Origin: Haliotis rubra
Lineage: Eukaryota
Assembly: GCF_003918875.1 (NCBI RefSeq)
Contig: NW_025767606.1
Span: 124,001 to 188,000, forward strand
Direction: 5' to 3'
Length of the DNA stretch: 64,000 nucleotides
Positions 5,102-59,229 of the stretch are shown piece by piece. The notes beneath the pieces were generated by a model that had not been told where the DNA came from, did not search any database, and was given only the letters and a program-made list of their open reading frames with translations. Position 1 is the first letter of the stretch, and every line of letters starts with the position of its first letter. Made by a program: the position numbers and the translations under genes.

Positions 5102-5177
5102 TATGTGGAGGGGAGTTGACAGCAACACCTGAGGAAACAATCTTTCTATCACCTGGATTTCCCTACTGGCATGCAAA
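5102..5177 (+). pseudogene. orphan CUB pseudo-exon (paralog of gene C exon 5)
   Basis: CGGELTATPEETIFLSPGFPYWHA vs gene C CGGELTATPEETVFQSPGYPYEYV. GTAAGT donor kept, acceptor AG lost, no partner exons found. Confidence 0.8.
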
Positions 5178-6585: not shown

Positions 6586-7437
6586 TACTGGCCACATAAA
6601 GAAACTGTGCACACAGAAAATATAAGGATAGGCAGACAGCGTCTTTATGCATAAATAGAGGTGTGTACATAGCAAGTACTGGAGACAATCAAACGCTCAT
6701 GCAGGTGCCAGGCGACGTGACGTCATTGATGGTGGTCTATGGACTTGCAATGTGTTACAGCATGTGCAGCCTGTGCAGCAGCTCACGACATGTGAAATAC
6801 AGAAATTGCTGTCTCTGTCGAAAGCTTGATGTTTGGTCATTCAAACGTTCACAAATTCACATGAGAAGTCACATGCACATCATGCCAAGATTAACATCTG
6901 CTCAACGTCATGAAGCCATTGGAATGGTTCGAGCAGCATGAGCCAACAACAGGTGGCAGCACATTTCCAATGCCATCGTAACACGATATCTGCATTGGTC
7001 AGGCGTTAGGGAAACAGTAATGACGTCGCCGACCACCCACGTTCTGGGCGTCCCCGACTAACTACGCCAAGACAGGACAGATGGATTCGGGTGACTCATA
7101 TCAGACACAGGTTCCAGACGGCACTCATCACGCCCCAAACCATTGCCCAGTCCTTCATTTAGAACATTTGGTAGCCTTTATGCGTCGTCGATGCACTGCT
7201 GTGCTTCGCGCGCATTATGTTCATACCCGTTATTGACTTTGTGACTTCGACGTGTGACCCCCGACTCAATTTTGAACTTCTGACGTCATCGTTACGGATA
7301 TTGTTCATGTTCTTTTGACATGTTGTTGAGGCCCGATACTTCAGCTTATATAGTGTCTACATCATGTCGTCTTTTCTGTGTTGTATTCCAATTCTGAAGG
7401 AATTTTCTGTGTGCACAGTTTCTTTATGTGGCTAGTA
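6586..7437 (+). mobile_element. Tc1/mariner element, internally deleted
   Basis: ~35-bp TIRs (TACTGGCCACATAAAAGAAACTGTGCACACAGAAAA / TTTTCTGTGTGCACAGTTTCTTTATGTGGCTAGTA) with TA flanks. Disrupted transposase N-terminus from 6882 (MPRLTSAQRHEAIGM...RSGRPRLTTPRQDR) is joined to the C-terminus MRRRCTAV...HTRY; the DDE core is missing. Confidence 0.88.
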
Positions 7438-9055
7438 TATATTCGCTGTTCCACGCAAACATATAACATTTTGAATTCTCTTAAATTATACAGAATCTTG
7501 TTACCAGATGGATAAATGTTTCTGGTAACATAATTTCATCGGTTCAATTTCTTAAAAAGATCGTATCCCGTGGACGAAAGGGCTCCTCGTCATATATTGA
7601 CATTCAGTTTTCATGTTCACTGGAAAACCCGGTGTTCCTAAATGTGGAACCTTGCCTAACTCCAATAAGCCTTTGCAGTGTGCATTCAGCTTACCCAGAT
7701 ATGACATGAAACTTTGACTTGTTGTGTCTTTGTACCATTGTTTTACGTTGTCATGCTGGGGATGCATAAGCAAATTGCTCTCAAAGCTGATTCCATTGAA
7801 AAGTCCGTTATCGAATAAAATAGTCACGAAAGAATTATAAACACTCCAAAGAGACTGGATTCCACAGTATAATTCTATTATTTTCTTCACAAGTAATTTT
7901 AAATATATCGCCTTGGCAACCGAGTGTATCAATATCTGACACATGCACAATTACCTGTAGTGGCAGCATGCCATGGGATAGTTCATGCATATCACTGCAT
8001 ATCACGTGGTGACTAATCCGAAAGAACAACAAATAGTTCATCTTACTTAAAAGCTAAATCCTTTGTTTACATCAGTTAATTATTTTTTCTTGCTTACACA
8101 TATTACGTAACTGTATTGAGAATTGTGTATTTTCTATCTGCAATTCGTTGTACGAAGTTACATCCCTTGTATGCTTGTATATGTATATAGAACAAAAGAA
8201 ACGGAAACTGTGTACTTCAGTGATCGCTTTATTTACATGTTGTAGTTCAAACATATACTAAAACAGAAAAAATATATATGATAAAACAGAAAAATACCCT
8301 GTTGTAGCTGTTTTATGTTCATGAATTATTTCCAACCTGTTCCGAGTACAAAAGCATAATAAACTTCATATCAAAACATCCGGCTGTCTTTGAGGATTTG
8401 CTAAATGTACCACACAGACACGATTTCTGAATATTTATAATATTCATTTCTGCACAACGTTGAAGTACATTTAACAAAATCAAACAACTGTCTGTATATA
8501 CATTCATGTAAACTGAACTCGCAAAAAAACATCCTTTCATCCATTTCATTCATCATGAACAAAAATTATAAAAATATGAGAGAAAAATAACACAGATCAA
8601 AACTATCACATCATGCCGTATCCCGTCACCGATTATCTATTTTAAGATGCTTCGTCAAAAGATCAACGGCACAGACCGTGCTGCATCCTGTGGCAAAGAA
8701 CACCTTTTGAGTAACAACGCGATTCAAACTCTGACCCTACCAGTGTGATCTGAGGTATTTTGTTGATAGCATTGTTGTTGTTTTAATTATTCTTTTTAAG
8801 GACAAAAGTATAGTTTATTACACTACACATGGTATAAAACAAATGTTATCTCACAAGTGTATAGCTCCATTCTCTAAGGATAAGTACCCTATAGCTGTTG
8901 GCCACAGCACCCCTGCCCACCAGTTCCAGTCATTTGTCGTGACGTCTATAGGATTCTACTTCACACGGTCTAAAGGCCTAATTGGCCTGTTGTATTCATG
9001 ACAGAATAATGATATCAGGCATCTGATAATCGATGGCGGTTGTACACATGGAATT

Positions 9056-9354
9056 TCAATATTTGTCGGGCAATGCTTCCGCAATGACGTTCCCTGGGGA
9101 AGGAATGACAGCACCCTGAGTTGCCGGTGTGTAGGCAGGAGGTCCAGTGAAGGTTGTGGCGGGCATTGCGTTGGTGATCTGTGCTTGGCCAAAGTTGATC
9201 GCAGGTACCTGGCCTACAGTATATTGCACTGGGATGTTTGTGGCAGTGGTGCGTTGGCCGTGTTTGTAGATGCATATGCCGAATACACTTATTATGAGTA
9301 GCAACAGAAACACGCCACCAATCGTACCTCCAACAATGGCTCCAACATCAGTAT
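9056..9354 (-). CDS. gene A exon 11 (TM helix + cytoplasmic tail)
   Basis: DVGAIVGGTIGGVFLLLLIISVFGICIYKH...TGPPAYTPAT...DKY*; hydrophobic span followed by a PPxY motif. Confidence 0.9.
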
Positions 9355-12300
9355 CTGAATCAATAAAATATGATGGTGCACAAACATTAGGTGATACTCC
9401 ATAATGCATGGTAAAATTGAGGTACCAAGTCATCTTAGACACAAAGCTTGCTGTGACGTGTTATAATGTACAACCCATCCCTTGCAGTGATTGTTGGTTA
9501 GAATCTTAATACACAATCATCTTATGGTATACCTTTTAGTTTGGCCAACAACCATGGTTTCACAGTGGTGGTTCCCCACCGTTAAATATAGAGTTCCTGT
9601 CCATCGTAGTTTCATTTATGCAACAAAACGTAGATTTTTAGTTCATGAGGTTCTTCAGTTTTGTCCATGGTTTTCAAAGGTTACACATCTCCTGGAGGGT
9701 AGAGGTTCAAATGATCACATTGTAGATCCAAATTACATGTTCCCACAGACACTCACACGGATACATTGCATTTCTTCACTATTCATCACTATTTATGTTC
9801 TAACAAGTACAAAAGCAAGATTCAGGAAACTACTGACAAACAGACAAAACAATATTTAAGTTGCCTACATCTGACTCTGGACTGATCTGCCATTAAAAGT
9901 GAGACTTCAATGACTTGGCCACCTGTAAACCAATCTGAAAGCCCACCTGTTCTCAAAGACACACGCCTAGACCAAGCGGACATTGTTGATACCTTTGACA
10001 TGCATCCTATCAAAGCGCTTTAGAGCAGTTATACTGACTAGATTTTCGCGTTATATTTGTTCTTAGTTTATTATATGATTCCCTTGTTGTATCAGATAAT
10101 TTGTCTCAGTCTCTCTATCGAGTTTGCACAATTAACAGGCAGTGCCTGAAATATATTTAAACAATAACCAAGGAGTGACGGGGAATGACAGACTATCTTT
10201 CACGAGTTATATTGATCATACGTAATTTTCGAGCCTTGGCGAGAGTTTTCGGAATCAGTTTTCGATCTTAAAGAACCCGCGAAAATGAACGCAGCAGTTT
10301 CTCTATAAGGAAACCCGCTATGTGGGGAATTTCCATATCACTAAGCGTGTGATTGGCTGTGATTGCAACGTTCACCAAGAGGTGTAACCTCCCTAGAAGC
10401 TTGCAGGAAAAATGGTACCCTGTGCCCTCCTTCCCAAATGGGTAATGAATACATAAAATAAAAACATAAATATATATTCCCCATAACATTTCAACGAAAG
10501 TTGACGTGACAGTACAGATTCTTTCTGTATGTATGAATCCATGCTGAGTAAATCTCAGAGTTTGCTTCTAATTGTTTCAATATTTTCTTTTATGGCTTCA
10601 TTCTATGATTTAATTCATAGTTTCCTTTATTTGTAAAGCATAAATTGCCACCGGCCAGAAGATCATGTTTGTCAATCCTGTACTGCAAGGTAAGACACTG
10701 TTATGATAGCACTCTAGAGAATTACATTTGGAGCAGGATAATCACAGTTTTATTTTATTTGATATTTATTTTGAGTTAAAGCTCTCTACGAACGTCTCCT
10801 AACATTATGGACATGTGTCTACGAATCACCATCAAACAACGATCATACCGAGAGTTCGTGTAATGTTAGCGTATCCTGCTCAGTCGTGGCACCACTCACA
10901 AACCACATGCAAGTGAAACGTTCGCCCGAAACATAAGGGGAATACATGGCATCATTTTATGGTATATGTTCAAGAAAAATAACATATGCCTTGATATGTG
11001 TTCTTGAAATGAAGTGACTGTCATAATTGTGAAATGTCTACAGAAGAAGAGAAGTCATGTTGAATTCTGTGTGCAAATCAAGGAAGGGGACGCTATGGTG
11101 AGTTGAGGTGAAATTGGATTTAACGTCGTGCTTGAGAATATTTCGCTCATATGACGAAGTGCATGCGTGTGTATGTGTATGTGCGGCTGCTTGTACTAGC
11201 CCAGACTGAAGCTGGTTTTATAGTGCTACTCCACTGAGATACCATGCCGCAGTGAAGCATGAATACTGACTGACTGACTGAGTTTGGTTTTACGCCGCTT
11301 TTAGCAATATTCCAGCCATATCACGGCGGGGAACATCAGAAATGGGCTTCACTTATTTAACCCATGTGGGGATTCGAACCCGGGTCTTCGGCGTGACGAG
11401 CCAACGCTTTAACCACTAGACTACCCCACCGCCCGAAGCTCATGAAAATCCCAGTCAGACACATTATACTGACTCCGAGCCGACCAGTCCTTGTTGTACC
11501 AACTAATGCCAAGCGCCAGGCAGGGACCAACAAGTACCACATTTTAACGTCTTTTGTTATGACGCGGTCGGGGATCGAACCCGCGACCTTCCGCTCTCGC
11601 CAGGCTATGGACATAACATAAACATTCATGTTAACCCGGTCGTCCACTCGACGCAGCCACCATGTTCTCACACTGATGCATTTTATGTAATGGTCTATCT
11701 TAAAGACCATTCCACTGGATGACAACGAACATGGGGTATATAAATTGTATCTTAAGCTTGTGTGTTCACTTACCAGGTGAAGAATGTTTAGATTTATATT
11801 GGACGGTATACTCTATCTTGAACCCACGATCAACACCAGATGAATCTGACTTGAATTTCAGGAACATAACAGAACCAGTACTGGTTGCGTTTGGTTTACT
11901 CTCTCCACACCAGCGACCGAGTGAAGGGGCATTCGAGTCCGACCCTTTAAGAGAACAAATGTCTTATATTTTCTACAAACCAATGAAGACACATATTTTA
12001 AATAATCCCTAACTCGCACCGGAGACCTGTACTGCAGTCAATAAGGTCATAACCTCAGGACTGGGCAATAGTGGTGCAGACACTATATACATAGACTTGT
12101 AGAATGTATACACACCACTTGCTATTGCACGCGCACGTTGCAAGACAAAGAATACGGAGAACCTATTCACGAATTCACATCAACCATCATATGCTAGTAA
12201 GACGATGGACATACATATCATGGAAATAAAACACGTGTCCCAGAAATTGTTTCAGAAATTATACAAAAATCAATTATTGTCGAAAAACAGCATCGAACAG

Positions 12301-28800: not shown

Positions 28801-31534
28801 TATGCTCGTAAACGATTACATGACACAGGTAAAGGATTATATGACCTTGGCGAGCATGCAGCGAATCCAGATATAACTTGCCAAGTCGTTTCCCAATACA
28901 TACAGATATATTTCTTCAGTATTTCGGCCTCATAGCCTAGAATACAATTGTTTTTCGTTGAACAATACAGCATCATTTCTATTTCCAGTTACATACCCAA
29001 TAGAAATACATTGTTCTTGAACCAGAGCTGTACATTTTGAAACTTACTCCAAACAGAGACCTACTACGTATTCTGTGTAAATTTAGATGTATGAGCCATA
29101 AACGTAATGTACATCAATATTGATGTGGTAAAATTGTAAATACTGGATTACTAAAGTGTATAAAATGTAATTATAACGTGATCCAAGATGAATTTCACTT
29201 TTTAGTGGTCTGTCCATTCTATGATGAAAGCAGAAAACTGTTGTTACCAAGTTATTTTTATACTTATCCAACCCATGAACAGTTTAATTTGTTAGTGTCT
29301 TCGCAAAATTTAGAATGCTTAAAAAATCTTGCAATCTTTTTGAAACGAAATCTATCAATTTAGTTTGTGGTATATATAAATAATCACTTCGATGTCCATG
29401 CGCACTGAATTTATGCATATACATTTTTGTACTTTTGGCCACGAGGCTTTAAATGCGAATATACTTAAGCTTATGCGTCCATTTTTTAAGGAAAAAGGCG
29501 AGTGCTCGTAAAGAATCCTCGTTGTTTGTATTAAATATATTACACAAGGGTTTCACTGAACAGTGATTAAAATTGGATAAGCAGGACGTGGAACTCATCT
29601 TCCGTAATCCCCATGGGCTCTAGTATGGTGATCTACCTTCAGTTGCTGTGATCTACAGCACGTTTTTATATTGTATTGTCTTGCATTATAGTGTACGTTT
29701 TAGTTACACACAAGTTTTATATCTCTATCTGTGATACACTAGTAGTTTTACTGTTCATCGTTAACAGTGGGCATTTTTTGTAAAATAGGAAATTTCTGAG
29801 ATTTGACACCCAGTTTTGCTTTCCAACATCATATATCATTGGTATGGATATCTAGAAAAATTCATTTGAAGTATTTTGATCCAGTATTTTATAACCCATA
29901 TTTGTATTGAAACAAACATCGTGTCGAGCCCTGTAGCACCAAGCATAACCTTATTGGATACGGATTTGCTGTCAACCTATAAAAACCGTTTTAAATACTT
30001 TTATTGTATTTTTTTAGACTTGTTCTATAACATTGAAATATCATTTCAGACTCATACAGTACAATCGGTTAACTTTGCTATCAAATATTTTATAAGCAGA
30101 TGGAAAAGATACGCAACTATTTATTCGAAATATTGTGAATAGAGGTATCATTGCACGTGAAGCTTCAGCTCCTTGCGTTTGACATGTTTTTGCCCATTTT
30201 AACGTTGATGAAAACAGGATACCTAAATCCTTTATAATAGGGTATAATTTTAGAATGTACAGATTTAGGTTTTTTGAAAACCCAGATTTCGCGTTTAGCA
30301 ACAATTCCTCCATTTCTGAATACAATAACATGGTTTTGTTTTATTCACTTCAAATTCCCAATTCACAGAAAGACTGGAGCACAGTATACAGTACCAGAAA
30401 CAGTATAAGAGAAGATTGTGAGTAAATGAGTGAGTTTAGTTTTACGACGCACTCAGTGTGTCATGAATATTTTGTTTGACAAATATACCGTGATCTCATT
30501 TATCCCACACTTCAGTCACAATCTCATTTATGAAAAAGGTGAAAAGTATAGGACATTGTGGAACACCTGCTGATGTGATAACGCTACTCGGTTTTTAGTT
30601 TGATCTCACACATGATTTAACAGATGAATACATAATAATAAAATTATCCTTAAGTACATTAAACATTTTCCCATGACAACCCTTTAATGATAAGTTAAAT
30701 AATAATTTGTTTCTGCCTTCATAGTCACAGGCCTTCTTAAAGTCAATGAATACACAGTAAAGCCTACCACGTGGTTTGCACAAATATTTAGATCAATGCT
30801 TGCAGAGTGAATATATTGTCGGTAGTAGAGTAACTAGACCTAAAGCCAGCTTGGAATTCGGATATAAAGTCGTTCAGTTCTATTCAAGACCTCAAACGTT
30901 TTTCTAATACTGCTGTAAATAATTTGCCCACAATGTTGAAAATAGAATTTACCGGTAATTGTTAGTGTCTGCCTTATCTGGAACAAACATACCTACATGT
31001 CCCATTAATCGATTTCTATGTATAATAAGGATCCACCAGCGGACAGGATACGCTCCATTTTTCCCAGACATATCATAACTTGTTTTCGTCACGATATTGC
31101 CGATGTGACGTTAAATATTAACTCACTCACTCACTCACCCAGACATATCACCATTTAATTCATCAACGCTTTCGATATAGTCGGAGTCGTTCCATAGAAT
31201 CCACTGTCAAGTTAATATATGCCTTTCTTATGATTATTGACATTGATTTAAACGCTTTCTCTATGTCAGCATTATAAACATATATACACCTGTGTACTGC
31301 CTCGAATTATGTTTGTAGAAGAGCGCATGCTTTCAGGCGTTCAAATTTCGGGTCAGCTAATATATGAATCGAGGAAGCAGTCTTTCAGAACATTGACTTT
31401 GCACGACATGAATGTCGGCCTTGGTGTGATGTTGTGTCACCTGTGAAAACCTGAAAATGATTACCTGTACTTGCAGCGTGTAATGTCGACAGCGTACCAA
31501 GTAGGACGGCTATGGTTTTGTATATCCCCAACAT
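9056..31534 (-). CDS. gene A: single-pass membrane protein, signal + 3 CUB + TM + PPxY tail (~494 aa)
   Basis: 11 GT-AG exons with compatible phases (31465-31534, 27281-27362, 25027-25163, 16909-17058, 16524-16611, 15453-15580, 14621-14779, 12754-12832, 12325-12446, 11774-11944, 9056-9354) sum to 1485 nt with no internal stop. Confidence 0.9.
11097..11600 (-). mobile_element. tRNA-headed SINE (Meta-domain-like) interrupted by a second tRNA SINE at 11266-11434
   Basis: Matches the copies at 27485-27834, 36449-36804 and 42628-42983. The nested element is flanked by an imperfect GAAGCATGAA duplication. Confidence 0.85.
11774..11944 (-). CDS. gene A exon 10 (CUB3c)
   Basis: SDSNAPSLGRWCGESKPNATSTGSVMFLKFKSDSSGVDRGFKIEY..., 171 nt. 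Confidence 0.9.
12325..12446 (-). CDS. gene A exon 9 (CUB3b)
   Basis: NAEVGWKITADEDYSVTIDFMEFGLENSDSCTSDYLEAFD, 122 nt. Confidence 0.9.
12754..12832 (-). CDS. gene A exon 8 (CUB3a)
   Basis: FDTEELTASYSRKYIYSPNYPFYYP, 79 nt, GTGAGT donor. Confidence 0.88.
14621..14779 (-). CDS. gene A exon 7 (CUB2c)
   Basis: VRSTLSGAGRFCGDDDTDYISSGHIIVVRFYSDGLFSRYKGFQMQLKAGHFK. The acceptor is ambiguous: CAGTAG tandem, plus a second in-frame AG about 21 nt downstream. Confidence 0.85.
14971..15210 (+). mobile_element. ~245-bp tRNA-less SINE (V-domain-like core, (ACTC)n tail)
   Basis: Other copies at 24394-24635+, 37951-38196+, 39865-40102+, 41360-41598-, 43238-43486+, 45889-46145+, 48377-48598-, 50160-50408-, 51865-52110- and 56080-56306-. 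Several have 10-14 bp TSDs. Confidence 0.85.
15453..15580 (-). CDS. gene A exon 6 (CUB2b)
   Basis: HQDCRWVIHAPANTNIEARIRNTSIETDSSSQCTYGFLDIYD, 128 nt. Confidence 0.9.
16524..16611 (-). CDS. gene A exon 5 (CUB2a)
   Basis: RYHCGGILNITTTDYTTITSPNYPGPYR, 88 nt. Confidence 0.9.
16909..17058 (-). CDS. gene A exon 4 (CUB1c)
   Basis: RFTLFGKILTWCGPSLPTFQSSSSTITIFFFTEASSLRRGFKLAYFETK, 150 nt. Confidence 0.88.
18224..19021 (+). pseudogene. gag-like ORF with CCCH/CCHC zinc fingers
   Basis: VWNGEYVDLALL, GWIMYDKQFR and CWDFNKGSCSRLSCRYPHKCGKCGNTSHGAAAC are typical of DIRS/Ngaro ORF1. Confidence 0.85.
19022..20932 (+). pseudogene. reverse transcriptase / RNase H (disrupted)
   Basis: RT motifs SPIGLVPKK, FRLIHHLSYP, KFDIKSAFR, LPFG, YLDDFL; RNase H motifs TDAAGSAGFG, LELFPIV, CDNQAVV, ADALSR. 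Frameshifts and a SINE insertion disrupt it. Confidence 0.92.
19976..20334 (-). mobile_element. SINE with 5S-rRNA-derived segment inserted between RT and RNase H
   Basis: Minus strand reads TGGCGCGTGG head, GAAGTTAAGCAGCG..CTTGGATGGGTGACC (5S-like), CORE-like CCTTAGGCAAG..AAAATGGGTACC, then a GCGCTTTATAAAT-(ATT)n tail. Confidence 0.75.
20854..21828 (+). pseudogene. tyrosine recombinase (two in-frame stops)
   Basis: FRVGEL, SKGD, HSFRIGAAT and GRWGSDSFKSYIR give the R-HxxR-W-Y catalytic signature. Stops near 21172 and 21244. Confidence 0.93.
21850..22392 (+). pseudogene. SGNH/GDSL hydrolase-like ORF of the Ngaro element
   Basis: Blocks VWLVGSS, RGGM, HLGSNN and DGVHL; one in-frame TGA at 22312 before DGVH. 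Confidence 0.8.
22523..23539 (+). repeat. split direct repeats of the YR retrotransposon
   Basis: 22523-22809 recurs at 23159-23539; the second copy has about 100 extra bp. Confidence 0.88.
25027..25163 (-). CDS. gene A exon 3 (CUB1b)
   Basis: NEDCRWTITASTPDMMVRIEVIDSDIYSQDETYATCVPDGVEGFN, 137 nt, GTAAGT donor. Confidence 0.9.
26535..26936. mobile_element. palindromic MITE with internal 118-bp tandem triplication
   Basis: TIR GGAGATAACCCTAGTGTGTT / AACACACTAGGTTTATCTCC; GACGGCGACT recurs at 26581, 26699 and 26817. Confidence 0.8.
27281..27362 (-). CDS. gene A exon 2 (CUB1a)
   Basis: DCGSRSLNATTHRQFIQSPGYPAGYA, 82 nt. Confidence 0.9.
27485..27834 (+). mobile_element. tRNA-headed Meta-domain-like SINE, full length
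   Basis: A box TGGTGTAGTGG, B box GGTTCGATCC, (TCACC)n tail, 13-bp TSD TCCAAAGTTCTGT. Confidence 0.9.
28990..29460 (+). mobile_element. LINE ORF2 3'-end fragment
   Basis: IQDEFHFLVVCPFYDESRK C-terminal zinc-finger-like region typical of non-LTR ORF2. Confidence 0.7.
29870..30990 (-). mobile_element. decayed LINE RT fragments
   Basis: Frameshifted motifs NIVGKLFTAVL, EFQAGFR..STTDNIFTL, LYCVFIDFKKA, MYSSVKSCVR; a similar IDFKKAFD remnant lies at ~28000-28210. Confidence 0.78.
31465..31534 (-). CDS. gene A exon 1, signal peptide
   Basis: MLGIYKTIAVLLGTLSTLHAAST, phase-1 GTAA donor. Confidence 0.85.
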
Positions 31535-32214
31535 TTGTTTGAACCTCCTAAACATGCATCCAACAAATAATGTTCAGTTTATAGGTTATCTGTTCTTATA
31601 GTGGCAGTGGTGTTACGGTTTCTTTATAGTCTGCAAGTCACGTTTGTATTGGCGTTTGAGCGATTCGCACATTGCTTAAAACGGTAACGTAGTTCTTTCT
31701 ATGATTTTGCATACAACCATCACTCATACAAAGATAGATTCAGTCTCGTCGTATCGTGTTGGGGTTCATTTCATGACTATACCTAAGACTGAATGATTAA
31801 TCGGAAAGATAATGTAGTGCCGAATATTGTCTTGGTAATTACTTGTCTCTACACTATTGTAGAGGATATTTGTATCTTCTTGTCAATGTTTATCAAAGTT
31901 GATATGTTCAGTGATGTGTGAGTGGGGCACATCACCAGATGGGGTAAACATCATGTCATTTGACATAAAACATCAGATACATGTCCTCTAATTAGAGAGT
32001 ATTTGAATTTACTCGTAATACTGTTGTGTCAGACTAACAGACTAAGGTCAAGTGTCATATGGAAGCTATTTTGAGATGCATATTCTGCTTCATTACTTAT
32101 TACTTGAATTCTGCTTCTCATGATTATGACTTCTTCATCTCTTTCATTATCCACATTATCGTTTATACAATGATGGTCAGTTGACTCTAGATGCCTATTA
32201 TTGAGATTGTTGGA

Positions 32215-33110
32215 GTGAGTGAGTGAGTTAAAATTTAAAGTCACTTTGGCAATATTTCAGCCATATCGTGACTAAAACAACATATATATTAACAATAATT
32301 AAAGATAGAGTATAAAATCCTGTCAACGAAGGACAGTAAAACAAGTAGAATATTACAGATATAAATGTAAAACTAGTAATTAAATCTAAAACATTTAAAC
32401 TATAGAGGACAATACAATATAAAAATAGGCTATAAATCACCAGCAACTGAAGGTAGTTCACCATACTAGGAGCGATGGGGACTTACAGTACCTGTGCTAC
32501 CTGCATGGACCCTAGCTGGATTTATAATGCCACGGCAAGAATTGAGAGTCCTGTGCACAGACACAGCAACCTCCACATTGGCAAATGTTTTGACAGACAA
32601 AAGATTTAGAGATTGCCATGAATCAATGTTTGGCGAATTTGTTTCAGTAGAATGATCAAGTTCGTCTAGTCGTCATACATCATTTGGAGGTCATTATCAC
32701 CAGATTGGCCCATGAGCCACACCCATTCTGGCATAGGACTCTAGGCAAGTTAACATAATAATCTGAACATCGAGGATAAAAAAAATAACCAAGGCCCAAA
32801 ATAAGCAAATGTGCAAATAATAGATTCACCATGCACAGGGCTTGGCGTGACCAGCCGATTGATGGAACCGGGCCAGTTCCACAACCCGTCTAGGTGAAGT
32901 AAGGGCCAAAATGGTGTGTTGGGCAAAGGAACACTGTTCCTGGAACCAGTGCCCTCAACCACAAGAATTCCGTCCTCCACCGACACAGGGGCGCAACCCA
33001 CGGCAAACGGGTTGGTGGACCAAATATGCCCCCAGGTCCACAACGGGGGGTTGAAGAGCGTTTAGCGTTACCCAGCACCAACCATGAGGAGGTGGCTCTT
33101 CACGGGTGCC
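32215..33110 (-). mobile_element. non-autonomous mini-derivative of the I/Nimb LINE (5'UTR + ORF1 scraps + 3'UTR)
   Basis: 13-bp TSD TGAGATTGTTGGA (32202-32214 / 33111-33123); both ends match 56322-56730 and 58530-58838. Confidence 0.88.
33052..33110 (-). ncRNA. HDV-like ribozyme, degenerate copy
   Basis: GGCACCC gt GAAGAGCC ACC TCCTCAT GGT TGGTGCT GG GTAAC GCTAA ac GCTCTTC. Confidence 0.65.
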
Positions 33111-35361
33111 TGAGATTGTTGGACTTAAACGAGTATGTATGATCAAAGTCAAAATGTTATGCAGTTTTGATAATATAATAGCACATTAAAACGAAAAAAA
33201 CACCGTGTAAATAAAATCATGTGGATTTGGAACAAAGGCTGTAAACAAAACAAAATAACTTGGAAAATCCTGTTTCCGTGTCAGCCTGGTTGCAGGTGAA
33301 AAACGCTGCCGCGATTGCGAAACATTTCCTTGTTATCGCCCGCCCGGTGTGTGGATTAAACTGTTTAGTAACCAGGACGCGGGGAATATTCATTGCGCAA
33401 CAGCTGGAGTGACAGGCTGAGACGCTCCTGCGCTATGATTCAGATATAAAATACAAGACGATAAGTTAATATTTACACTAGTACACGGCAGACAAAATCA
33501 ACACTTCGAATTTTAGCTGCACGGAAATTCAATAAGAAGCTGTCATATACGTTGATAGTTGGGTCCATCGATCACTGCATAACCTAGTTTTCCACAGGCC
33601 GTCAACCCCGTCGTGGAGTGCTGCTGGGCGCCGCCTTAGACACCACACGTTTCAATTTTTATGTAAATTCTGTGGGTGGCGTATGCTGTCGGTGGTGCAG
33701 GCCAAGGTCACACGCACCTTTTTCACGAGCTGTACACCTAGGATCAGGGTGTCATTCAATAGCAAGAATGTAATAATAAAGAACGGGGAAAAATGCATAG
33801 TTTACCCCGAATGCAAGTTGACAATCTAAAGACAAGGAAACTAAAGGATGAACGCATAGACGTAGGTGTATATGAGGATAGCCTAGCATTTGATAAGATG
33901 ATAATCTTATTATAACAACTACTGCGTGTGAGTGAAACATCATCATGGTGGGAAGCGTTTTATCTTACTTTTAACCGAAATAGAAATTAAACAATTCATC
34001 AATATTTTATGCTACCAACACACCTTCAGGAAACAGACTAAATATCTCGAGGTGGCGTACATAACGTGAAAGGGATTTTCACGTGCAGTGTACACAAGGT
34101 AAAACTACTGGTGAAGCATTTGTAGTTCTTACATACGTTTTATGCTTATTGCGTGACTCAGACGAGATGGGAGGGTTACAAACTAAACATTGTATCTTGT
34201 CTTTAACATTAAGTTTCAGTTTTCCCATAATTACAAAATACCTTGGGTTAAACATAAAAATACAAAAATAACTTTTTTATCACGGTCACGAACGACCGTG
34301 TTAATTGTTGCTATGCTGTGTCTAACTTTGGGAGACATTTAGAAGTTGGAGCAACAAGGAAGGATAACAATGTATGGATGGACAACTGTTAAAATTGCAA
34401 TGACAGCGACGTTTCGGTGTAGGTTCTAACACCGTTAACAAGCAAGTGATGAGTGAGTGAGAATGGCATCATTCCAACAATATCACGGCAGGGGACTCCA
34501 GAAATGAAATTCACACATTGTACCCATGTGGGGAATCGAACCCGGGTCTTCGGTGTGACGCTTTAACCACAAGGCTACCCCCACCGCTCCCAAGTGATGA
34601 AGAGATAAGGGTTAGAAAATCATATATACAAGAGTGAGGAGATGTTTGTACTGTACAATGGGGATTAAGTCTGGAATAGGATGGAACCTACATCTCAACG
34701 TCGCTCTAGCACGCAGGTCAACAATGATCAACACTGTAACAAAGCACATACTGAGTATAGCGCGGAGCATACAAGTAACTATGTGAGAAATGGGACCCGT
34801 CACTGACGCTTATCTACACGCCTACACACTGCCCCTGGTTGTCTCTAACTGAATAGCATATATTGTAATAGATATCGCTTCACAATTGTGCAGACTGCGT
34901 TATCATGCCGCTATTGGTGACCAGCGATTGTGAAAGTATGTACAATAGAAGTGAGACTCTTTCATAATTGTTTACAGTGTCATCATAGGAATGAGACATC
35001 CCAGCTAAATGCCGAATTCATTATATGACTCGAACAGATCATGAGCATGAGTTGATGAATCACTATTAAATACTGATGATAACACAAAAATGTGGCTTTG
35101 TCCTGCCTCACCGGTGGAATAAAGACGAGAACATAATTTTCATTAATCAAATAAATTGTAAAGTGAGGTTTAATATAATTCGCGTATGTACTTGTTTTGC
35201 TTATGATATGCTCATATTAGTCTCTGCACAACGGATCTTGATAATATAATTATAAAAATGTGAATGTGAACGCCAGAGAATATTGGTAATTAACGGGGCA
35301 AAATTGCTGTGGATATAATCTGACATGATCAATGAAAATCTGTGATTACTTCTATTTAAGT

Positions 35362-38900: not shown

Positions 38901-41900
38901 TATTTGAATTAGTTTTCATAAACCGTCAGGATAATTGCGTACCCAGTCATGCATATCCTCGTGATTTCATTCCCAAAACACCGTGAAAATCATATGAATG
39001 GAGCAGGAAGCAAATGTACTGTAAGTCGCCATGGTCCCAAGTATGGTGATCTACCTTCAGTTGTTGGCGATCTATAGCCTGCTTTTATATTGTATTGTCA
39101 ATTATAGTTAAAATATGTTAGATTTAAATACTAGTCTTAAATTTATTACTGTCATAATGTAGTTGTTTCAATGTCCTTGGCAGACAGGTAAGTATATTAC
39201 ATGTGTATAAGTTTGTTTTTATTCATTTATAAATTAACAACTTTCTTAGTCACGATATGGTTGGAATACTGCCGATGTGACTTTAAATCTTAACTCACTC
39301 ACTCATATGAATGGACCAAGGAAATTCACTAATGACGCCAGGTGTTCGACAAAAGGGTGCGCATGTTCTACCCTACCTGTAACACATGCCATTCATACAA
39401 GCTGCTTGAAAAAGCTTGAATGTATTTTCAGTGCTCTGTATGTTGTGGCCTGTTTAAAATGCGGACACTCACGTGATCGGTGAACCAAACAAAACAGTAG
39501 TTGATCGTGATTTTACGACTATTGTGTCAAAGTTTAGGGATTCTTCTGCTTACAGGTAACGTAAACGTTTTGGAAATGGATTCACAGCCGCGGGGGCATA
39601 GACATATTTTTATATATCCACCCTTAAAGAATATTCAAAAGCAATGCATACCAAATAAATATTTAATTCGAACTTCATACAACAATGATGTATTTGCTCT
39701 ATAGCAACCACAAACTATCAAGATTTAAAATGTGTTATGTAATGCTTCAAATGTGCCTTCAAGAGCAGAAACGGGTGGAAATGAAATGTAAAATCACACT
39801 TCGTGTATATGGACCTATGCCTTTTCATACAACAAACATTCAAAAAGGAAAATAAAAATCCACTGACCTGTGAAGATACAGGTTAGAATTGGTTTTCAGC
39901 AACCCATGCATGTCGTAAGAGGCGACTAACGGGTCGGGCGGTCAGGCTTGCTGACTTGGTTGACATATGTCATCGTATCCCAGGTGCGTAGATCGATACT
40001 CATGTTGTTGATCCCTGGTCTGCCTGGTCCAGACTTGATTATTTACAGACCGCTGTCACATAGCTGGAATATTGCTGAGTGCGTCGTAAAACTAAACTCA
40101 CTTACATTATAATACCCCTGTCAATGTGTTCCAGCGAAATGAATTGCACATGGTACTTCACGGCCGAGAATGAAAATGATACAATAGTCATGACGTTTGA
40201 TGAGATTAATGTGCAGCAAAGCACCTATTGTGACATTGGCTCGGTTTCCATCTACAACGACCACGAAAACGACGGTGAGTACGATATATGTCCATCTCGG
40301 ATGACGATCTTCCTTATTCTCTCAGTACCTGAACTGCACCCATTCTGTTGTGCTGAATAGTTAGATATGCCCGCCAAGTATAGATGATACACGATTTTAC
40401 ACTTATGTTAGTAAACAAGGACTGATCGGTTCGGATCACAATGGTATAGCCACGTTAACACCCTGGATGGTGTACCTCGCCGATATATTTTTACTAGTCA
40501 CTGGTTCGCTAGCCCGTGACTAGTAAAAAACTCCAGTCGGGCCAGTATATCTCCGCAGTCACTGACCCGACTGGCTCGCGAATTTTCATGGGGTCATCTT
40601 TTAAATAAAACCACTCTCTCCAAATTGTTAAGTCATAATACACTTTTAAATTATGCAAGATTATGGCCTGGTAAATTATCATTATGGTATTTTACCTTTT
40701 TCTATTCTTTTGCTTAGTTTCCACATTAAAAGTTTTGGCTAGTGAATTATTTTGTTGCCTAGGAACTTTCAGGCATAACTAGCCCTACTGGCAAGCAAAA
40801 TTTGGAAACTATTTCGCACACTGGACGTGCGACTCTCGTAGAGCTACGGTCGCTTTGAGGAACGGGGCCCTGGGATTTTGGTTATTGTACTTGAGACCCA
40901 GGGCGGCTAGGATCCTCGGCTTTACAACCTTCAAACTGTCTGTATCTTGTAAACGGTTACTAAACGTTTACGTTGAAAAAGTCACTTTATCAAAACTGTT
41001 ATTTCCTTAATGATTGAATACGGTGTAACTCAATGAGCTAGCACAATTACACAGGGATACATACGGGCTAGTACAAGTAGCGTATGTGCCCATCGATATT
41101 TTGGGAATATTGCTAAAAACAGCTTAAAACAATACTCCAACTTTTTCCACTGCCAACTTTTTCCATAGCAGACCTTATGTGAATAAGGTATGAATTCCTT
41201 TTGAGACTAATGTATGGACATATGTACCAAAGCTTCGATTCTATTGTATCCTGAGCTTATCTATTCCTATTTGTGGCGGAACTGCATTATCAGTGGTTTA
41301 AGGGAGGTTACTCTCCCACATTCGAAACTAAACATGGTAGATTTTGCATACACTGGTATGGTTGGTTTGTTATTTGCTCAGTACTCAGCAACATTCCAGC
41401 TTTATGGCGGCGGTCTGTACATATTCGAGTCTGGACCAGACGTTCCAGTGATCAACAGCATGAACATCCATCTACGGAATTGGGAACCGATGACATTTGT
41501 CAACCAAGTTTGCATGTCTGACCACCCCATCCCGTTAGTCGCTTCTAACGACAAGCATGGGTTACTGAAGATCAATTCTAGCCCGGATCTTCACGGGTAT
41601 CGAAACTAAACTCTCACCATAAACTTTCACAGATATCGGCCGCAATAAATGCTCACAAATACAGTTCAAGGGTCACTTATTCATACAAAATGCATTAAAT
41701 TGTGACTACACTGACCGTGGATTCGCTGATATTTATGAGTGTACACCTTTTGTAGAACGGTTCTAAAGCTATCTATGACGCAATTGGTTGGGATTTTGAC
41801 CTTTGATGTCATAGGGGTCATATGCTTATCGCCGAGTTTCTACTTTGGGGTATGGATGTGTTGCGAAAATGCTGCGTGAATTTAACGGTCGTGTCGAGTA

Positions 41901-54746: not shown

Positions 54747-56321
54747 GATCATCAGATAATAATCGGCAATACACTGGCACACAAATTCAGACTCAATTCT
54801 GAAATATATTCACTAGTACCTGCAAGTATTTATCTAACAATGTCTTGATTAAGCATTATCTAACAAACATGTTAGCCGTAAATTGTATTTTCCTATTACG
54901 GTTTTCAATACCCGAACATCGGAAAGAAATGTGCTTTTTCCTACATTTGTAACGAAACGTCATTTGTTATGAAAATGTCTGGTAAAATATAGTATATGCT
55001 GCAAATGCCAAATGTTAATCAAAAAAATTAATTGTTTACGTTGAAATACTAATTACCACATTTTCGACATTGGGACTGAAAAATACATATGTCAGTTTCA
55101 AATCAGTTATTCAAGCAGTTTGTGAGTCTGCTTTTGTACATTTTGATTCAGATACTCATGTATTGAGTCATAGACTGATGTTTACATATTATCACAATGG
55201 GATGTGCAATAAAGAACATGTAATTTCGGTTTCGTTCATGTGTAACATGATCCAGTGTACCACATACCTTGAACTATATAACTACGTGTAGCATTGCGTT
55301 ATTGTCTGTCCCCACTTTATGAAGATATTGCTACTTCTTAAATGTATAAAATATATTTCATAAAATAATAAAACAATCTTAAAACTTCACTTGGTCAACG
55401 CACACAAGAACGTAATTAAGGAATGAATATAAACGACTCATGATCGCCAATGTATGACGATTTTGCGAAATTGTTGTCATATCTTTACCTGTAAGTGATA
55501 AGATGAGATATAAGACTATTATCATTACAAGTACATTTGGCAGACTAGATTAGCACCAAAATGTGAAAAGTGATATATCATTACACTAGGTTATGAGTAG
55601 GAATATACGACACAAACGCAGTTGGGGGCCAGAGGGTAGAAATTGATTAATGGTACCGATGCTGCTTCATTTGCAAACATAATAAATCCGACCGCCTCCG
55701 AAAATGCATTTGTAATTAAATAATCAGGTAGTTTGTTGCGAAACAATAAAGTCATACTCCAAACTATGTCTTATCAGTTGTTTTTGTTCTTGGCTAATCG
55801 TGTGGCTCTATCAGATAATGTGTCTATTTCAAAGTGGCATAACTAACTCAGTCACTGGCTGTACAGTTTCATGATCAATGTCATGTTCTGTGTTTGTTCC
55901 GCAACTTCATTGGTAATCGTCCTTTTCAAAGTGTTGTGAACTCAAAAAACGAATCATTTTCTCACAACTCCTATTTTGTTTCAATTCACTTTTCATTCAG
56001 TAAAACCCTCACTATATTTCTGAACTGAATCATGAACCATTCCAGCACTATGTACAAGTAGTTTTACATCGATGTTTTTGGTTGTTGTTTGACGCCGCAT
56101 TCAGCAATATACCAGCTATGCGAAGGCGGTCTGTACGTAATCGAAACTGGACCAAACAATCGAGTGATTGGCGTTATGATCGATATACGCAATAGCTGTA
56201 CGATGACATGCGTCAACCAAGTCACGAGCCTGACTGCCCGATCCCGTTACCTCTTACGACAAGCATAGGTAGCTGAAGATTAATCCTACCTGTATCTTCA
56301 CGGGTCGGTTCTCAAAGAGCC

Positions 56322-56380
56322 GGCACCCATGAAGGGCCACCTCCTCGTGGTGGGTGCTGGGTCACGCTAAGCGCCCTTCG
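56322..56380 (+). ncRNA. minimal HDV-like self-cleaving ribozyme at the LINE 5' end
   Basis: P1 GGCACCC/GGGTGCT, P2 GAAGGGC/GCCCTTC, P3 ACC/GGT, L3 TCCTCGT, P1.1 CC/GG, J4/2 GCTAA. Confidence 0.8.
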
Positions 56381-58838
56381 ACCCCCGTTGTGGACCCGGG
56401 GGGATATTAGGTCCACCAAGCCGTTTGCCGTGGGTTGCGCCCCTGTGTCGGTGGAGGACGGGAGGCTGGTGGTTGAGGGCACTGGTTCCAGGAACAGTGT
56501 TCCTTTGCCCAACACACCACTTCGCCCCTTACTTCACCTAGACGGGTGGTTGAACTGGCCCGGTTCAATCAATCGGCTGGTCACGCCATGCCCTGTGCAT
56601 AGTGTACATTTTTGCACATTTAACTCTTTTGGGGTTTTGGCCATTTTTGATTGTGTATTTATAAATTATTGTTCTATTTAATTGCCTAGAGTCCTATGCC
56701 AGGAGGCGGTGGCTCATGGGCCAATCTGGCACTATTGACCTCCGGGTTCTGTTTGTCTTCAGGTAAATGTCTAGGGCGGAACCAGCCTTACTTTTATTCT
56801 GTTTGATTATTATAGCTACCCGTGTCTCTTTTGCTGGAGTATAGCATCCCTGTAACCCTGGTGGTCGTAGTCGGCTTCCACTTCGACACCGTCCTTGTTG
56901 ACACTCCATGGTGGGTGGGGAGCGGGAATGTTGAATGATTTTCCTTATCATGGCAACCTTACTTCACACTGGTTCTAGATCCAAAAATAAAAGAAGACAT
57001 TTAGATACAGATACCATTTCTTCTTCTGAGGATGAAAGTGTTTCTCAAAGTAACATCGACTCATGGCCACGGTTTCTGGTGGTTAATGGCGTTGATGGAG
57101 TACCTCTCCAGATTAACCCTTTGTTGTGTCCAAGGCTGTTGACGGGATTTGTGGAGATGTCAAGAATGTAACGCGTCTCAGAAATGGATCTCTGCTTGTC
57201 GAATGTTCACGGCGTCAACAGTCAGTTAATCTTCTCAAAGCAGATCATTTTGGAACTACTGAAATCGCTGTCTCTGTGCACAAATATTTAAATTCGAGTA
57301 GGTGTCATCCGAGATCGTGCAAGGTGTCTTTCTGACATGTCCGAGGATGAGATAGCATCAGAACTCAAATCTCAAGGTGTCACGTCTGTGAAAAGGTTCA
57401 CCAGAAAAGATCAGGACAGAGTTGTACCAACGACCACTTATCTTCTTACGTTTGCGTTTCCCAAAGTACCGTCATCAATCAAGGCTGGTTATTTCAACAT
57501 CGGAGTGGATGTATATATACCAAATCCACTCCGATGTTATAATTGTCAGAAGTTTGGGCATGGGGCCAGGTCTTGTACTAATCCAATTAGTTTTGGATTT
57601 AGAAAATTTAAAACCGTTTTCAAGACACCATTTATCTATTTTATTTAAACACAGCTGCAGTTGCCGTTCAATAGTATGCATATTTTTCCCACGACAAGAA
57701 ATATTAAAATCATCCACAAAAACATCCACTTTTAATTGAAATAATCGAATTATATAATGATCTTGCTACTGGCCAAAGCGACATCGTCTTCTGTTGGTTA
57801 CCCAGCCACGTTGGCATTTCTGGGAATACAATGGCCGATCTTGCTGCCAAGGCAGCACTCAACAAATCTGTGACACCACTTCTTATTCCATATTCTGATT
57901 ATAAAGCTGGCATTAGAACTTACATCCGTGATCTGATGCAGAAGAAGTGGGACAACCAAGTAGGTATTAATAAACTACATGCAATAAAACCTTATATTGG
58001 TTACACCTACTTGGGTTGTCAGTCCAGATTTGAGGAGGTCATTATGCGACGATGTCGTATTGGCCATACGCGCTATACTCACAAATACCTATTGAAAGGT
58101 GAGGATCCTCCGTTTTGTATCCCTTTGTGATGAGAACCACGGTCAAGCATCTCCTGCTTGACTGTGTTGAATTCTCCATCATAAGGGATAAATATTTCAA
58201 TGTAAAACAATGAAGGATCTTTTACAAATGTTAGTTATCATTTAATTATTGTTTTTTTAAAAGAAATTGATTTCTTTGATGAATTCTGATTAATGTGGTT
58301 TATAAATAGATATATTTTAAAGATTGGTAATTTCGATTAGTACCTTAGATTGTTAGTGGCTGTACCCTCAAAGGAGGTTAAAGTACTGTAAAATTATTGT
58401 CCTCCTGAGAGGGTACGTAAGTCCCAAAACTTTCAAAGTAGACTTTTCACATACCAAGTTTTTAAACGTAGTATTTTTTTCATTTAGATTTTGGCTAAAT
58501 TGTCCTACAATCACCAGCGGCTGAAGGGATGGTGTAAACCAACTAGGGTCCATGCAGGTAGCAAGGTACTGTAAGTCCCCATGGACCCTAGCATGGTGAC
58601 CTACTTTCAGTTGTTGGTGATCTATAGCCCATTTTTATATTGTGTTGTCCCCTGAGGTTAAAATGTTTTAGACTCTATTACTAGTTTTATCTGTATATGT
58701 GATATTCTAGTTGTTTTACTGCCCTTCGTTGGCAGGTTTTTATAATATTCATATATTTCATTTCAATATCAAATGTTCTCGTCACGATATGGCTGAAATA
58801 TTGCCGATGTGACGTTAAATATTAACTCACTCACTCAC
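56322..58838 (+). mobile_element. I-group (Nimb-like) LINE with intact ends, large internal deletions and an inverted RT piece
   Basis: 12-bp TSD TCTCAAAGAGCC (56310-56321 / 58839-58850). ORF1 remnants WPRFLVV, LRNGSLLVEC, RCYNCQKFGHGARSC; inverted FVDDFNI at ~57586-57738; RNase H end WLPSHVGISGN..ADLAAK; RIGHT..H and TVKHLLLDC; (ACTC)n tail. Confidence 0.9.
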
Positions 58839-59229
58839 TCTCAAAGAGCCAAGCCCAGAATTACATATTCGTAAAGACAACTCATTCTTAAGGTTTAGCT
58901 TATACTGATGAGGAAATGTATGATTTGGAAAGATGCTTGTGTGTTTGGAGTATGGAGGTATGGTTAAGGAACAATTTCAATATCAGAGATCGCTTTCCCA
59001 AACTGATACCCCTCGAACATTAAGCTGGTTTGCTACGGAGTTGTCCGAAAAGCAACACTGATTCCAACTCTTTAATGACAGAGATTTATTATGAAAAATC
59101 TGGATAATACCAGAACAGTAGAAATGTTTTGCAAGTCTGTGATATCGATTTCATGATGAAATGTTGATCTCACCATTCGAAGATTCCTTAGTCCAGACAC
59201 AACATGTTTCCGAAATTTCAGCATAGTTA

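What the first reader, a model, noticed from the sequence alone, without database searches (positions are those of the whole stretch)
56322..56380. Minimal HDV-like ribozyme defines the exact 5' end of an I/Nimb-type LINE
Seen: the first base after the TSD starts a complete HDV nested double pseudoknot. P1 is 56322-28/56352-58 with a G1-U wobble, P2 56331-37/56373-79, P3 ACC/GGT, L3 UCCUCGU and P1.1 CC/GG. P4 is reduced to about 5 nt, and J4/2 is GCUAA with the putative catalytic C at 56367. The second copy (33052-33110, -) also abuts its TSD and shows a compensatory P2 change (GAAGGGC/GCCCTTC to GAAGAGC/GCTCTTC). Known: HDV-like ribozymes process the 5' ends of R2, RTE and L1Tc/Ingi elements. 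Inference: this LINE family releases itself from host read-through transcripts with a nearly P4-less ribozyme. I do not know of this being described for a molluscan Nimb-like family.
Basis: partly seen in the sequence, partly recalled or inferred. Interest (0 to 1): 0.82.

Follow-up and report, generated by a model that had tools for sequence, protein, structure and literature searches.

The report
Minimal HDV-like ribozyme heading abalone LINE
The first 59 bases of two dead copies of an abalone jumping gene (a LINE) have the fold and core of a very small hepatitis-delta-type self-cutting RNA that most likely trims the element's transcript to its exact first base, which is a known trick, and a ribozyme of this kind was already reported from abalone in 2011.

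Summary
56322-56380 (+) and 33052-33110 (-) each follow a target-site duplication directly. Both can form the HDV nested double pseudoknot: P1 of 7 bp with a G1-U wobble, P2 of 7 bp, P3 ACC/GGU, L3 UCCUCGU, P1.1 CC/GG, a 5-nt linker in place of P4, and J4/2 CUAA.

A strict descriptor hits only 56322 in the window and 0.015 sites per shuffled window. Seven more copies in three other abalone assemblies start at the same G with unrelated flanks. One of them is an intact 6.2-kb LINE with APE, RT and RNase H. Four stem pairs change on both sides. Contigs of three organisms stop matching exactly at 56322.

The core (ACCUCCUCGUGGU-N7-GG-N5-GCUAA) occurs in 100 metagenome and 10 viral stretches. Their P1 and P2 sequences are entirely different but complementary. 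Several sit directly after phage tRNAs.

Self-cleavage was not tested. Rfam hits fall below the gathering scores. The Nimb assignment could not be checked.

Eickbush 2013 cites Webb & Luptak 2011 for an abalone HDV-like ribozyme with 5 nt instead of P4. This scan has also noted the same family on other pieces of this genome. The feature is real, but it is a member of a known kind.

The parts
56311..56321 (+). 5' target-site duplication of copy A (CTCAAAGAGCC; 10-12 bp, because the tail repeat makes the 3' limit ambiguous)
56322..56380 (+). Minimal HDV-like ribozyme, copy A. P1 56322-28/56352-58; P2 56331-37/56373-79; P3 56339-41/56349-51; L3 56342-48; P1.1 56343-44 with 56359-60; 5-nt linker 56361-65 in place of P4; G56366; putative catalytic C56367; UAA 56368-70
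56381..56600 (+). Conserved 5' leader after the ribozyme. It is shared at 71-74% identity with LINE leaders of an oyster (L007), H. asinina (L008/L010) and a Logan contig (L011) that lack this minimal ribozyme
56322..58840 (+). Copy A of the LINE: dead and rearranged. It equals positions 1-1302, inverted 3967-4106, and 5110-6176 of the intact 6177-bp relative L001:5851-12027. ORF1 remnants with a CCHC knuckle lie at 56935-57580, an inverted RT piece at about 57580-57729 (-), and the RNase H end and C-terminal piece at 57831-58130. The (ACTC)n tail is at 58825-58840
58841..58851 (+). 3' target-site duplication of copy A
33052..33110 (-). Ribozyme of copy B. P2 carries the compensatory A14-U54. 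P1 has a C7/U31 mismatch and L3 has G26A, so it is probably weakened
32213..33110 (-). Copy B: an 898-bp non-autonomous, internally deleted derivative (LINE positions 1-455, 981-1026 and 5879-6176) with no ORF. The (ACTC)n tail is at 32213-32228
33111..33121 (-). 5' TSD of copy B (CAACAATCTCA)
32202..32212 (-). 3' TSD of copy B

Best explanation
56322-56380 is a copy of a minimal (P4-less) HDV-like self-cleaving ribozyme. It forms the first 59 nt of an RNase H-bearing, APE-type LINE family of abalones and of that family's internally deleted non-autonomous derivatives. The inferred mechanism is as follows. The element is transcribed as part of a longer read-through RNA. The nested double pseudoknot folds co-transcriptionally. 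C46 (56367) in J4/2 acts as the general acid, with a Mg2+ ion held by the L3 U-G pair. The chain is cut immediately 5' of G1. The released RNA therefore begins exactly at G1 with a 5'-OH, and a full-length reverse transcript places G1 next to the target-site duplication. Three things are shown here: the fold is possible and is conserved through compensatory changes; the core is identical to that of established ribozymes; and G1 is the element's first base genome-wide. Two things are inferred: the cleavage itself and its role in 5' processing. The two window copies are dead elements. Copy A's ribozyme is sequence-intact, while copy B's is probably impaired.
For: Fold and chance: (descriptor hit only at 56322; 0.015 per shuffled window). 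Rfam: the best sub-threshold hits are HDV families that start at model position 1 on 56322 (RF02682 25.4 bits, RF00094 22 bits, drz-agam-1 12 bits; for copy B). Exact 5' end: TSDs abut G1 in copies A and B and in the intact element L001 (AATGATGTTTT on both sides). Seven further copies in three assemblies have unrelated flanks right before G1. Contigs of three organisms lose similarity exactly at 56322 in 64, 145 and 73 contigs, with unrelated upstream letters. Covariation within abalone copies (A2): 98.7% of cells paired, and 4 pairs changed on both sides (P1 pair 6 C-G/U-A; P2 pairs 4, 5 and 7), against 0 in all slid controls and 1 of 500 shuffles. Same architecture elsewhere: the core pattern, which leaves P1 and P2 free, matches 100 metagenome and 10 viral stretches. 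Of 113 matches, 86 have a P1 of 7 bp with at most one mismatch and a perfect P2 of at least 5 bp. On A1, P2, which was not used to choose the rows, is 82.5% paired with all 7 pairs covarying; over the whole structure, cells paired fall from 93.3% to 33-45% in the slid controls. [quoted passage not shown] Autonomous partner: L001 has ORF1 of 429 aa and ORF2 of 1228 aa with Exo_endo_phos, RVT_1 and RNase_H. A related H. asinina LINE carries a P4-bearing HDV-like ribozyme within 2 nt of its 5' end.
Against: No cleavage assay or RNA 5'-end data were available. All runs were Logan contigs, and the one possible RNA contig (X7 record 22) runs 48 nt upstream of G1, which is uninformative. Nothing in the window reaches an Rfam gathering score. 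Nested MFE folding gives no signal (z -0.2 to -1.0), as expected for a pseudoknot. Two unpaired bases lie between CUAA and P2. Copy B and the H. asinina copies L122-124 have L3 G26 mutated. Within abalone the covariation rests on only 8 distinct sequences, which are related to each other.
Confidence: 0.85

Rival explanations
1. The conserved first ~60 nt act as DNA, as an internal promoter or start-site element in the way proposed for 'LINE-promoter' heads of mollusc SINEs. G1 would then be a transcription start, and the HDV-like fold would be incidental or secondary.
For: PMC4758252 proposes promoter function for LINE-derived 5' heads in Haliotis SINEs. L1Tc's Pr77 is both promoter and ribozyme (same paper). 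No RNA 5'-end chemistry was available.
Against: Compensatory changes in P1 and P2 preserve RNA pairing, not DNA sequence. The same core works as a ribozyme scaffold in phage tRNA arrays and metagenomes with unrelated stems. The P3/L3 core equals that of R2 and drz-Agam ribozymes. The two functions are not mutually exclusive.
Confidence: 0.08
2. It is a chance or relic motif. The family once had, or only mimics, an HDV-like fold and no longer self-cleaves. The exact 5' ends would come from another process.
For: Rfam scores are below gathering. Several copies carry L3 or P1 defects. No activity data exist.
Against: Descriptor expectation is 0.015 per window. All core positions are invariant and the stems covary across species. 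An intact, apparently young full-length element with perfect TSDs carries an unblemished copy.
Confidence: 0.05

Closest known systems
HDV-like ribozyme of abalone (Haliotis discus) reported in Webb & Luptak 2011, RNA Biol 8:719, as cited in PMC3774820
   Same: Same host genus, HDV-like, and 'only 5 nucleotides instead of a P4 stem', which matches the GUNNY linker seen here.
   Different: The primary paper is not held, so I could not compare sequences or see whether the LINE context, the RNase H-bearing partner or the non-autonomous derivatives were described.
Minimal P4-less HDV-like ribozymes of metagenomes (drz-Mtgn, Riccitelli 2014) and theta ribozymes of gut phages (bioRxiv 10.1101/2023.06.13.544163)
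   Same: Identical core and geometry: P3 ACC/GGU, L3 UCCUCGU, GG, 5-nt GUNNY linker, GCUAA, a 7-bp P1 and a ~7-bp P2. There are exact pattern matches in 100 metagenome and 10 viral stretches, several directly 3' of phage tRNAs.
   Different: The context differs. Those process tRNA 3' trailers in phages or have unknown roles, whereas this one is the first 59 nt of an animal LINE. None of the metagenome or viral loci has related LINE ORFs.
5'-processing HDV-like ribozymes of R2, RTE and L1Tc/ingi LINEs (Eickbush 2010; Ruminski 2011; Sanchez-Luque 2011; summarised in PMC7761336)
   Same: The ribozyme sits at the extreme 5' end, and the cleavage site equals the element's first base. The P3/L3 sequence is identical to the R2 catalytic core (PMC3414825). 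Internally deleted non-autonomous derivatives keep the ribozyme and the 3' end, like R2 SIDEs.
   Different: Those ribozymes have a P4 helix (except B. mori R2) and belong to other LINE clades. Here the host is a non-site-specific, RNase H-bearing APE LINE of a mollusc, and P4 is replaced by 5 nt.

Membership tests
HDV-like self-cleaving ribozymes (structural class) | Nested double pseudoknot: P1, P2, P3 and P1.1 in the canonical order | tested here: met
   All 19 pairs are standard in copy A. 98.7% of cells are paired in 9 abalone copies, against 36-48% in slid controls.
HDV-like self-cleaving ribozymes (structural class) | Cleavage-site G1 closing P1 with a G-U wobble; cytosine at the first J4/2 position; L3 with the U...G pair and CC for P1.1 | tested here: met
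   G1-U37, C46 (56367), and L3 U21 C22 C23 U24 C25 G26 U27. G1, C46, U21, C22 and C23 are invariant in the 9 abalone copies. G26 is changed in 2 of the 9 (A in copy B, U in L122), both decayed copies.
HDV-like self-cleaving ribozymes (structural class) | Covariation supporting the helices | tested here: met
   4 pairs change on both sides within abalone. 13 of 14 P1/P2 pairs covary across 36 sequences sharing the core.
HDV-like self-cleaving ribozymes (structural class) | Site-specific, Mg2+-dependent self-scission abolished by the C-to-U mutation | not testable with these tools
   This needs an in vitro transcription and cleavage assay.
Rfam RF02682 (HDV-F-prausnitzii) / RF00094 (HDV_ribozyme) | Score at or above the family's gathering threshold | tested here: not met
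   25.4 bits against 44, and 22 bits against 50. The models include P4 and cannot score P2 or P1.1. I do not file it under these Rfam families.
Minimal P4-less HDV-like ribozymes (drz-Mtgn / theta type) | P4 replaced by a few nucleotides, with the rest of the core kept | tested here: met
   A 5-nt linker (GUCAC, GUAAC, GUAGC, GUUAC). The same core occurs in 110 metagenome and viral stretches.
Theta ribozymes | Location directly 3' of a phage tRNA | tested here: not met
   Here the ribozyme is at a LINE 5' end. The phage relatives L116, L017 and L112 do abut tRNAs.
LINE 5'-end processing ribozymes | Ribozyme +1 equals the first base of full-length element copies, next to the TSD | tested here: met
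   Copies A, B and L001. Unrelated flanks before G1 in 7 more copies. Loose ends at 56322 in 64, 145 and 73 contigs.
LINE 5'-end processing ribozymes | Cleavage from an upstream co-transcript in vivo | not testable with these tools
   Only assembled contigs were available.
I-group (I/Nimb) non-LTR retrotransposons | ORF2 with APE endonuclease, RT and RNase H; gag-like ORF1 with a CCHC knuckle | tested here: met
   L001 ORF2: Exo_endo_phos, RVT_1, and RNase_H at 34.5 bits against a cutoff of 25.8. The CX2CX4HX4C motif is in the window ORF1 piece, with zf-CCHC at 20.3 bits, just under the cutoff of 20.8.
I-group (I/Nimb) non-LTR retrotransposons | RT-domain phylogeny placing it inside the Nimb or I clade | not tested
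   No reference RT set (Repbase) is available in these tools.

The most novel reading that the evidence does not exclude
The same minimal ribozyme module (identical core, free stems) serves both phage tRNA processing and animal LINE 5' processing. In abalones its main carriers would not be the LINE itself but very abundant, promoter-less, internally deleted retroposons that depend on read-through transcription plus self-cleavage. In assembled contigs the ribozyme and leader are about 100 times as deep as the adjacent LINE body. That would make these a SINE-like class defined by a ribozyme head rather than a Pol III head.
Probability: 0.3. Interest if true: 0.55.

Novelty: new member of a known kind. 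Interest (0 to 1): 0.3.

Why it matters
It adds a well-documented case in a mollusc and in an RNase H-bearing APE LINE. The case has an intact autonomous partner and non-autonomous derivatives, and it fits the rule that LINEs use HDV-like ribozymes to set their 5' ends. It also shows that the smallest natural HDV-like core known from phages and metagenomes is used by an animal retrotransposon. It does not open a new mechanism. The ribozyme type was already reported from abalone in 2011, and this scan has met the same family repeatedly in this genome.

Tried and rejected
An Rfam scan of the whole window at gathering thresholds found nothing.

Nested MFE folding of four ribozyme versions gave no signal, as expected for a pseudoknot.

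I used the 97-aa ORF just after the ribozyme as a handle to find other copies. It has no homologues, so it is probably not a gene, and Pfam finds nothing in it.

An oyster LINE (L007), a Logan contig (L011) and L004 share the leader or ORF1 but show no minimal ribozyme with either the descriptor or the covariance model.

A spider ORF1 relative (P0007) had no DNA available.

None of the metagenome or viral loci with the core has LINE ORFs related to L001, so they are not hidden copies of this element.

The papers by Webb & Luptak 2011, Ruminski 2011 and Riccitelli 2014 are not held, and PMC4758252 has no held supplements. I therefore could not compare sequences with the published abalone ribozyme or with the LP-SINE head.

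I ran no further search on naming the clade, because source names would not resolve Nimb against I.

Full report
OBSERVATION. P1 is 7/7 paired, with G1-U37. P2 is 7/7, with a possible eighth pair U9-G59. P3 is ACC/GGU, and P1.1 is C22-G39 and C23-G38. A 5-nt linker stands where P4 would be, and C46 is base 56367.

The second copy (33052-33110, minus strand) has the compensatory P2 change G14-C54 to A14-U54. It also has a C7/U31 mismatch and G26A in L3.

Both copies directly follow a target-site duplication. Copy A has (T)CTCAAAGAGCC and copy B has CAACAATCTCA. Both end in an (ACTC)n tail. Self-BLAST puts the start of homology between the two copies exactly at 56322/33110.

A strict HDV descriptor finds only 56322 in the whole window on both strands. 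The descriptor requires a perfect P1 of 7 bp starting with G, P3 of 3 bp, L3 of the form NCCNNNN, GG, C-N-R-A, and a perfect P2 of at least 5 bp. It finds something in 3 of 200 dinucleotide shuffles, or 0.015 per window.

WHAT THE ELEMENT IS. Copy A (56322-58840) and copy B (33110-32213) are both dead.

I took the ORF1 fragment with its CX2CX4HX4C knuckle (57337-57585; Pfam zf-CCHC and an inverted RVT_1 piece) and searched the protein representatives, which gave 4650 relatives. I then fetched their contigs.

L001 (assembly GCA_022045235.1) holds an intact 6177-bp element at 5851-12027. It has perfect 11-bp TSDs (AATGATGTTTT) and the same tail. It has an ORF1 of 429 aa and an ORF2 of 1228 aa. 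ORF2 has Exo_endo_phos, RVT_1 and RNase_H domains above Pfam cutoffs.

Measured against this element, copy A equals positions 1-1302, an inverted 3967-4106, and 5110-6176. Copy B equals 1-455, 981-1026 and 5879-6176. Copy B is therefore a short internally deleted non-autonomous derivative that keeps the ribozyme head and the 3' end.

This architecture fits the RNase H-bearing I group. I could not test Nimb against I because no reference RT set is available.

IS THE FOLD CONSERVED? The ribozyme is found at L001:5851, L002:3322, L003:3957(-), L006:3334, L006:7211, L125:3977 (H. rufescens by protein names) and L122-124:3950 (H. asinina; this is one segmental duplication). All have unrelated sequence immediately before G1.

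In the 9-copy alignment A2, 98.7% of cells are standard pairs. Four pairs change on both sides: P1 pair 6 (C-G to U-A), P2 pair 4 (G-C to C-G), P2 pair 5 (G-C to A-U) and P2 pair 7 (C-G to U-A). No slid control has any such pair, and only 1 of 500 shuffles reaches four.

Other variation falls in J1/2, J2/3, linker positions 42-43, the two bases after CUAA, and position 59. P3, P1.1 and GCUAA never vary, and neither does L3 apart from position 26. That position is A in copy B and U in the H. asinina copies L122-124, all of them decayed copies.

GENOME-WIDE 5' END. I laid Logan contigs of four runs on 56150-56800. In three organisms, 12,707, 7,925 and 4,891 contigs matched. At exactly 56322, 64, 145 and 73 contigs stop matching and continue upstream with mutually unrelated letters (agreement 0.37-0.38). 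This is the signature of an element terminus.

The best-supported variants inside the ribozyme are C>A at 56363 (linker), C>T at 56375 and 56376 (P2 3' strand) and G>A at 56380. The list is truncated, so silence elsewhere proves nothing.

The summed depth of 56326-56611 is about 100 times that of 56612-56677. The ribozyme and leader therefore head many more copies than the adjacent LINE body does.

The only possible RNA run gave one contig, which runs 48 nt past G1. That neither supports nor refutes cleavage.

RELATION TO KNOWN RIBOZYMES. Rfam gives nothing at gathering thresholds. On the 201-nt stretch, the top hits are HDV-F-prausnitzii (25.4 bits, model 1-74, starting at 56322), HDV_ribozyme (22 bits) and drz-agam-1 (12 bits). 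Copy B scores lower. The Rfam models contain P4 and cannot score P2 or P1.1.

[quoted passage not shown] It also occurs in drz-Agam-1-3.

I searched with the pattern ACCTCCTCGTGGT-N7-GG-N5-GCTAA, which leaves P1 and P2 free. It matched 100 metagenome and 10 viral stretches. Of 113 matches, 86 have a P1 of 7 bp at the expected distance, with at most one mismatch, and a perfect P2 of at least 5 bp, all with different stem sequences.

On 36 sequences with the abalone P1 register (A1), P2 is 82.5% paired and all 7 pairs covary. P2 was not used to choose those rows. Over the whole structure, 93.3% of cells are paired against 33-45% in the slid controls, and the covariation score is 0.709 against 0.165 in shuffles. 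G40 and U41 of the linker were left free by the pattern and are nearly invariant, and position 44 is mostly a pyrimidine (C or U).

Many of the viral and gut loci are phage tRNA arrays. In L116, L017 and L112 the ribozyme starts 0-4 nt after a tRNA, which is the context described for theta ribozymes (bioRxiv 10.1101/2023.06.13.544163). None of these loci has LINE ORFs like L001.

The abalone ribozyme therefore has the architecture and core of the known minimal P4-less HDV-like ribozymes, in a different context.

A related LINE of H. asinina (L008/L010) carries a different, P4-bearing HDV-like ribozyme at 3195-3261. Its P1 is CCCCCAC/GUGGGGG, its P2 is GGUGUCA/UGACACC and its J4/2 is CGAA. It scores 34.3 bits against RF02682, end to end. 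It lies within 2 nt of the point where the two copies start to be identical.

MECHANISM. The best-supported reading is co-transcriptional self-cleavage 5' of G1. This frees the element RNA from upstream read-through sequence and fixes its first base, as established for R2 and other LINEs (PMC7761336). The shown parts are the fold, its conservation, core identity and the exact genomic 5' ends. The chemistry and the in vivo role are inferred.

Rival readings are a promoter or start-site element (the LP-SINE idea of PMC4758252) and a relic motif. Both are disfavoured by RNA-level covariation and by the use of the same core with unrelated stems elsewhere. Promoter and ribozyme functions could also coexist.

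NOVELTY. [quoted passage not shown] I could not read that paper.

Earlier notes of this scan describe the same family on other pieces of this genome. I used them only as leads, and I re-derived the covariation, the phage relation and the literature link myself.

The finding is real and well supported, but it is a further member of a known kind. The LINE clade, the intact partner and the abundant ribozyme-headed derivatives are the only parts that may not be in print.

Noticed in passing
window 56087-56315: A separate ~230-nt repeat lies just upstream of the LINE insertion site, with at least 12 further copies in the window at 72-77% identity. Its core (56238-56281) is extremely deep in contigs of three organisms. 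It is probably a SINE into whose end copy A inserted.
   Followed up: partly
window 56381-56600; L007:3551-3724; L011:2209-2366; L008/L010:3481-3654: The leader after the ribozyme is conserved at 71-74% with LINE leaders of an oyster (Saccostrea cucullata), H. asinina and an unidentified Logan contig, none of which has the minimal ribozyme. By eye it starts with a hairpin (GUGGACC...GGUCCAC here, GGGACC...GGUCCC there) whose loop CGGGG(G) can pair with the preceding CCCCCG. Earlier notes equate it with the 'LP-SINE head' of PMC4758252.
   Followed up: partly
L008 and L010, 3195-3261: A related H. asinina LINE family has a different HDV-like ribozyme with a small P4, and P1 starts with C rather than G. 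It scores 34.3 bits against Rfam RF02682, and the two copies become identical 2 nt upstream of it.
   Followed up: partly
L001:5851-12027: An apparently intact full-length member in assembly GCA_022045235.1: perfect 11-bp TSDs, open ORF1 (429 aa) and ORF2 (1228 aa; APE, RT, RNase H), with the ORFs overlapping by 4 nt. It is possibly still active.
   Followed up: partly
window 57580-57729 (-): Copy A contains a ~140-nt RT fragment in inverted orientation between the ORF1 knuckle and the RNase H end. This suggests a template switch or rearrangement during or after insertion.
   Followed up: no
L027, L037, L047, L051, L057, L065, L066, L068, L084, L109 (contigs WLWD01/WLWI01): A repeated element in one metagenome project carries the same ribozyme core (P1' GCCUGGG, P2 AGUCAU/AUGACU). 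It is often preceded by (GT)n in place of the P1 5' strand. It is probably another eukaryotic retroposon family with 5'-damaged copies.
   Followed up: no
L012:324-382 and 1235-1293: Two identical minimal ribozymes lie 911 bp apart in direct orientation on one 1580-bp metagenome contig, a tandem arrangement reminiscent of retrozyme-like repeats.
   Followed up: no
L116, L119, L018, L064: Phage tRNA arrays holding the same ribozyme core also hold tRNAs with the CUA anticodon (amber suppressors, called tRNA-Pyl by ARAGORN). This is as described for theta-ribozyme phages.
   Followed up: no
window 58798-58840 vs 31094-31136; 58554-58837 vs 39003-39305: The last 43 nt of the LINE tail recur 100% identical at 31094-31136. 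The last ~300 nt recur at 73% at 39003-39305. These may be other elements sharing the LINE 3' end, that is, possible SINE partners or 5'-truncated copies.
   Followed up: no
L122, L123, L124 (H. asinina CM074531.1): Three identical copies of the element and its surroundings are spaced about 58 kb apart. This is a segmental tandem duplication, not three insertions.
   Followed up: no
window 56382 (run X9 loose ends): Two contigs of organism C carry GGCACCCGUGAAGAGC joined directly to UCUUCAAC. These are copies in which the whole ribozyme core between the two P2 strands is deleted.
   Followed up: no
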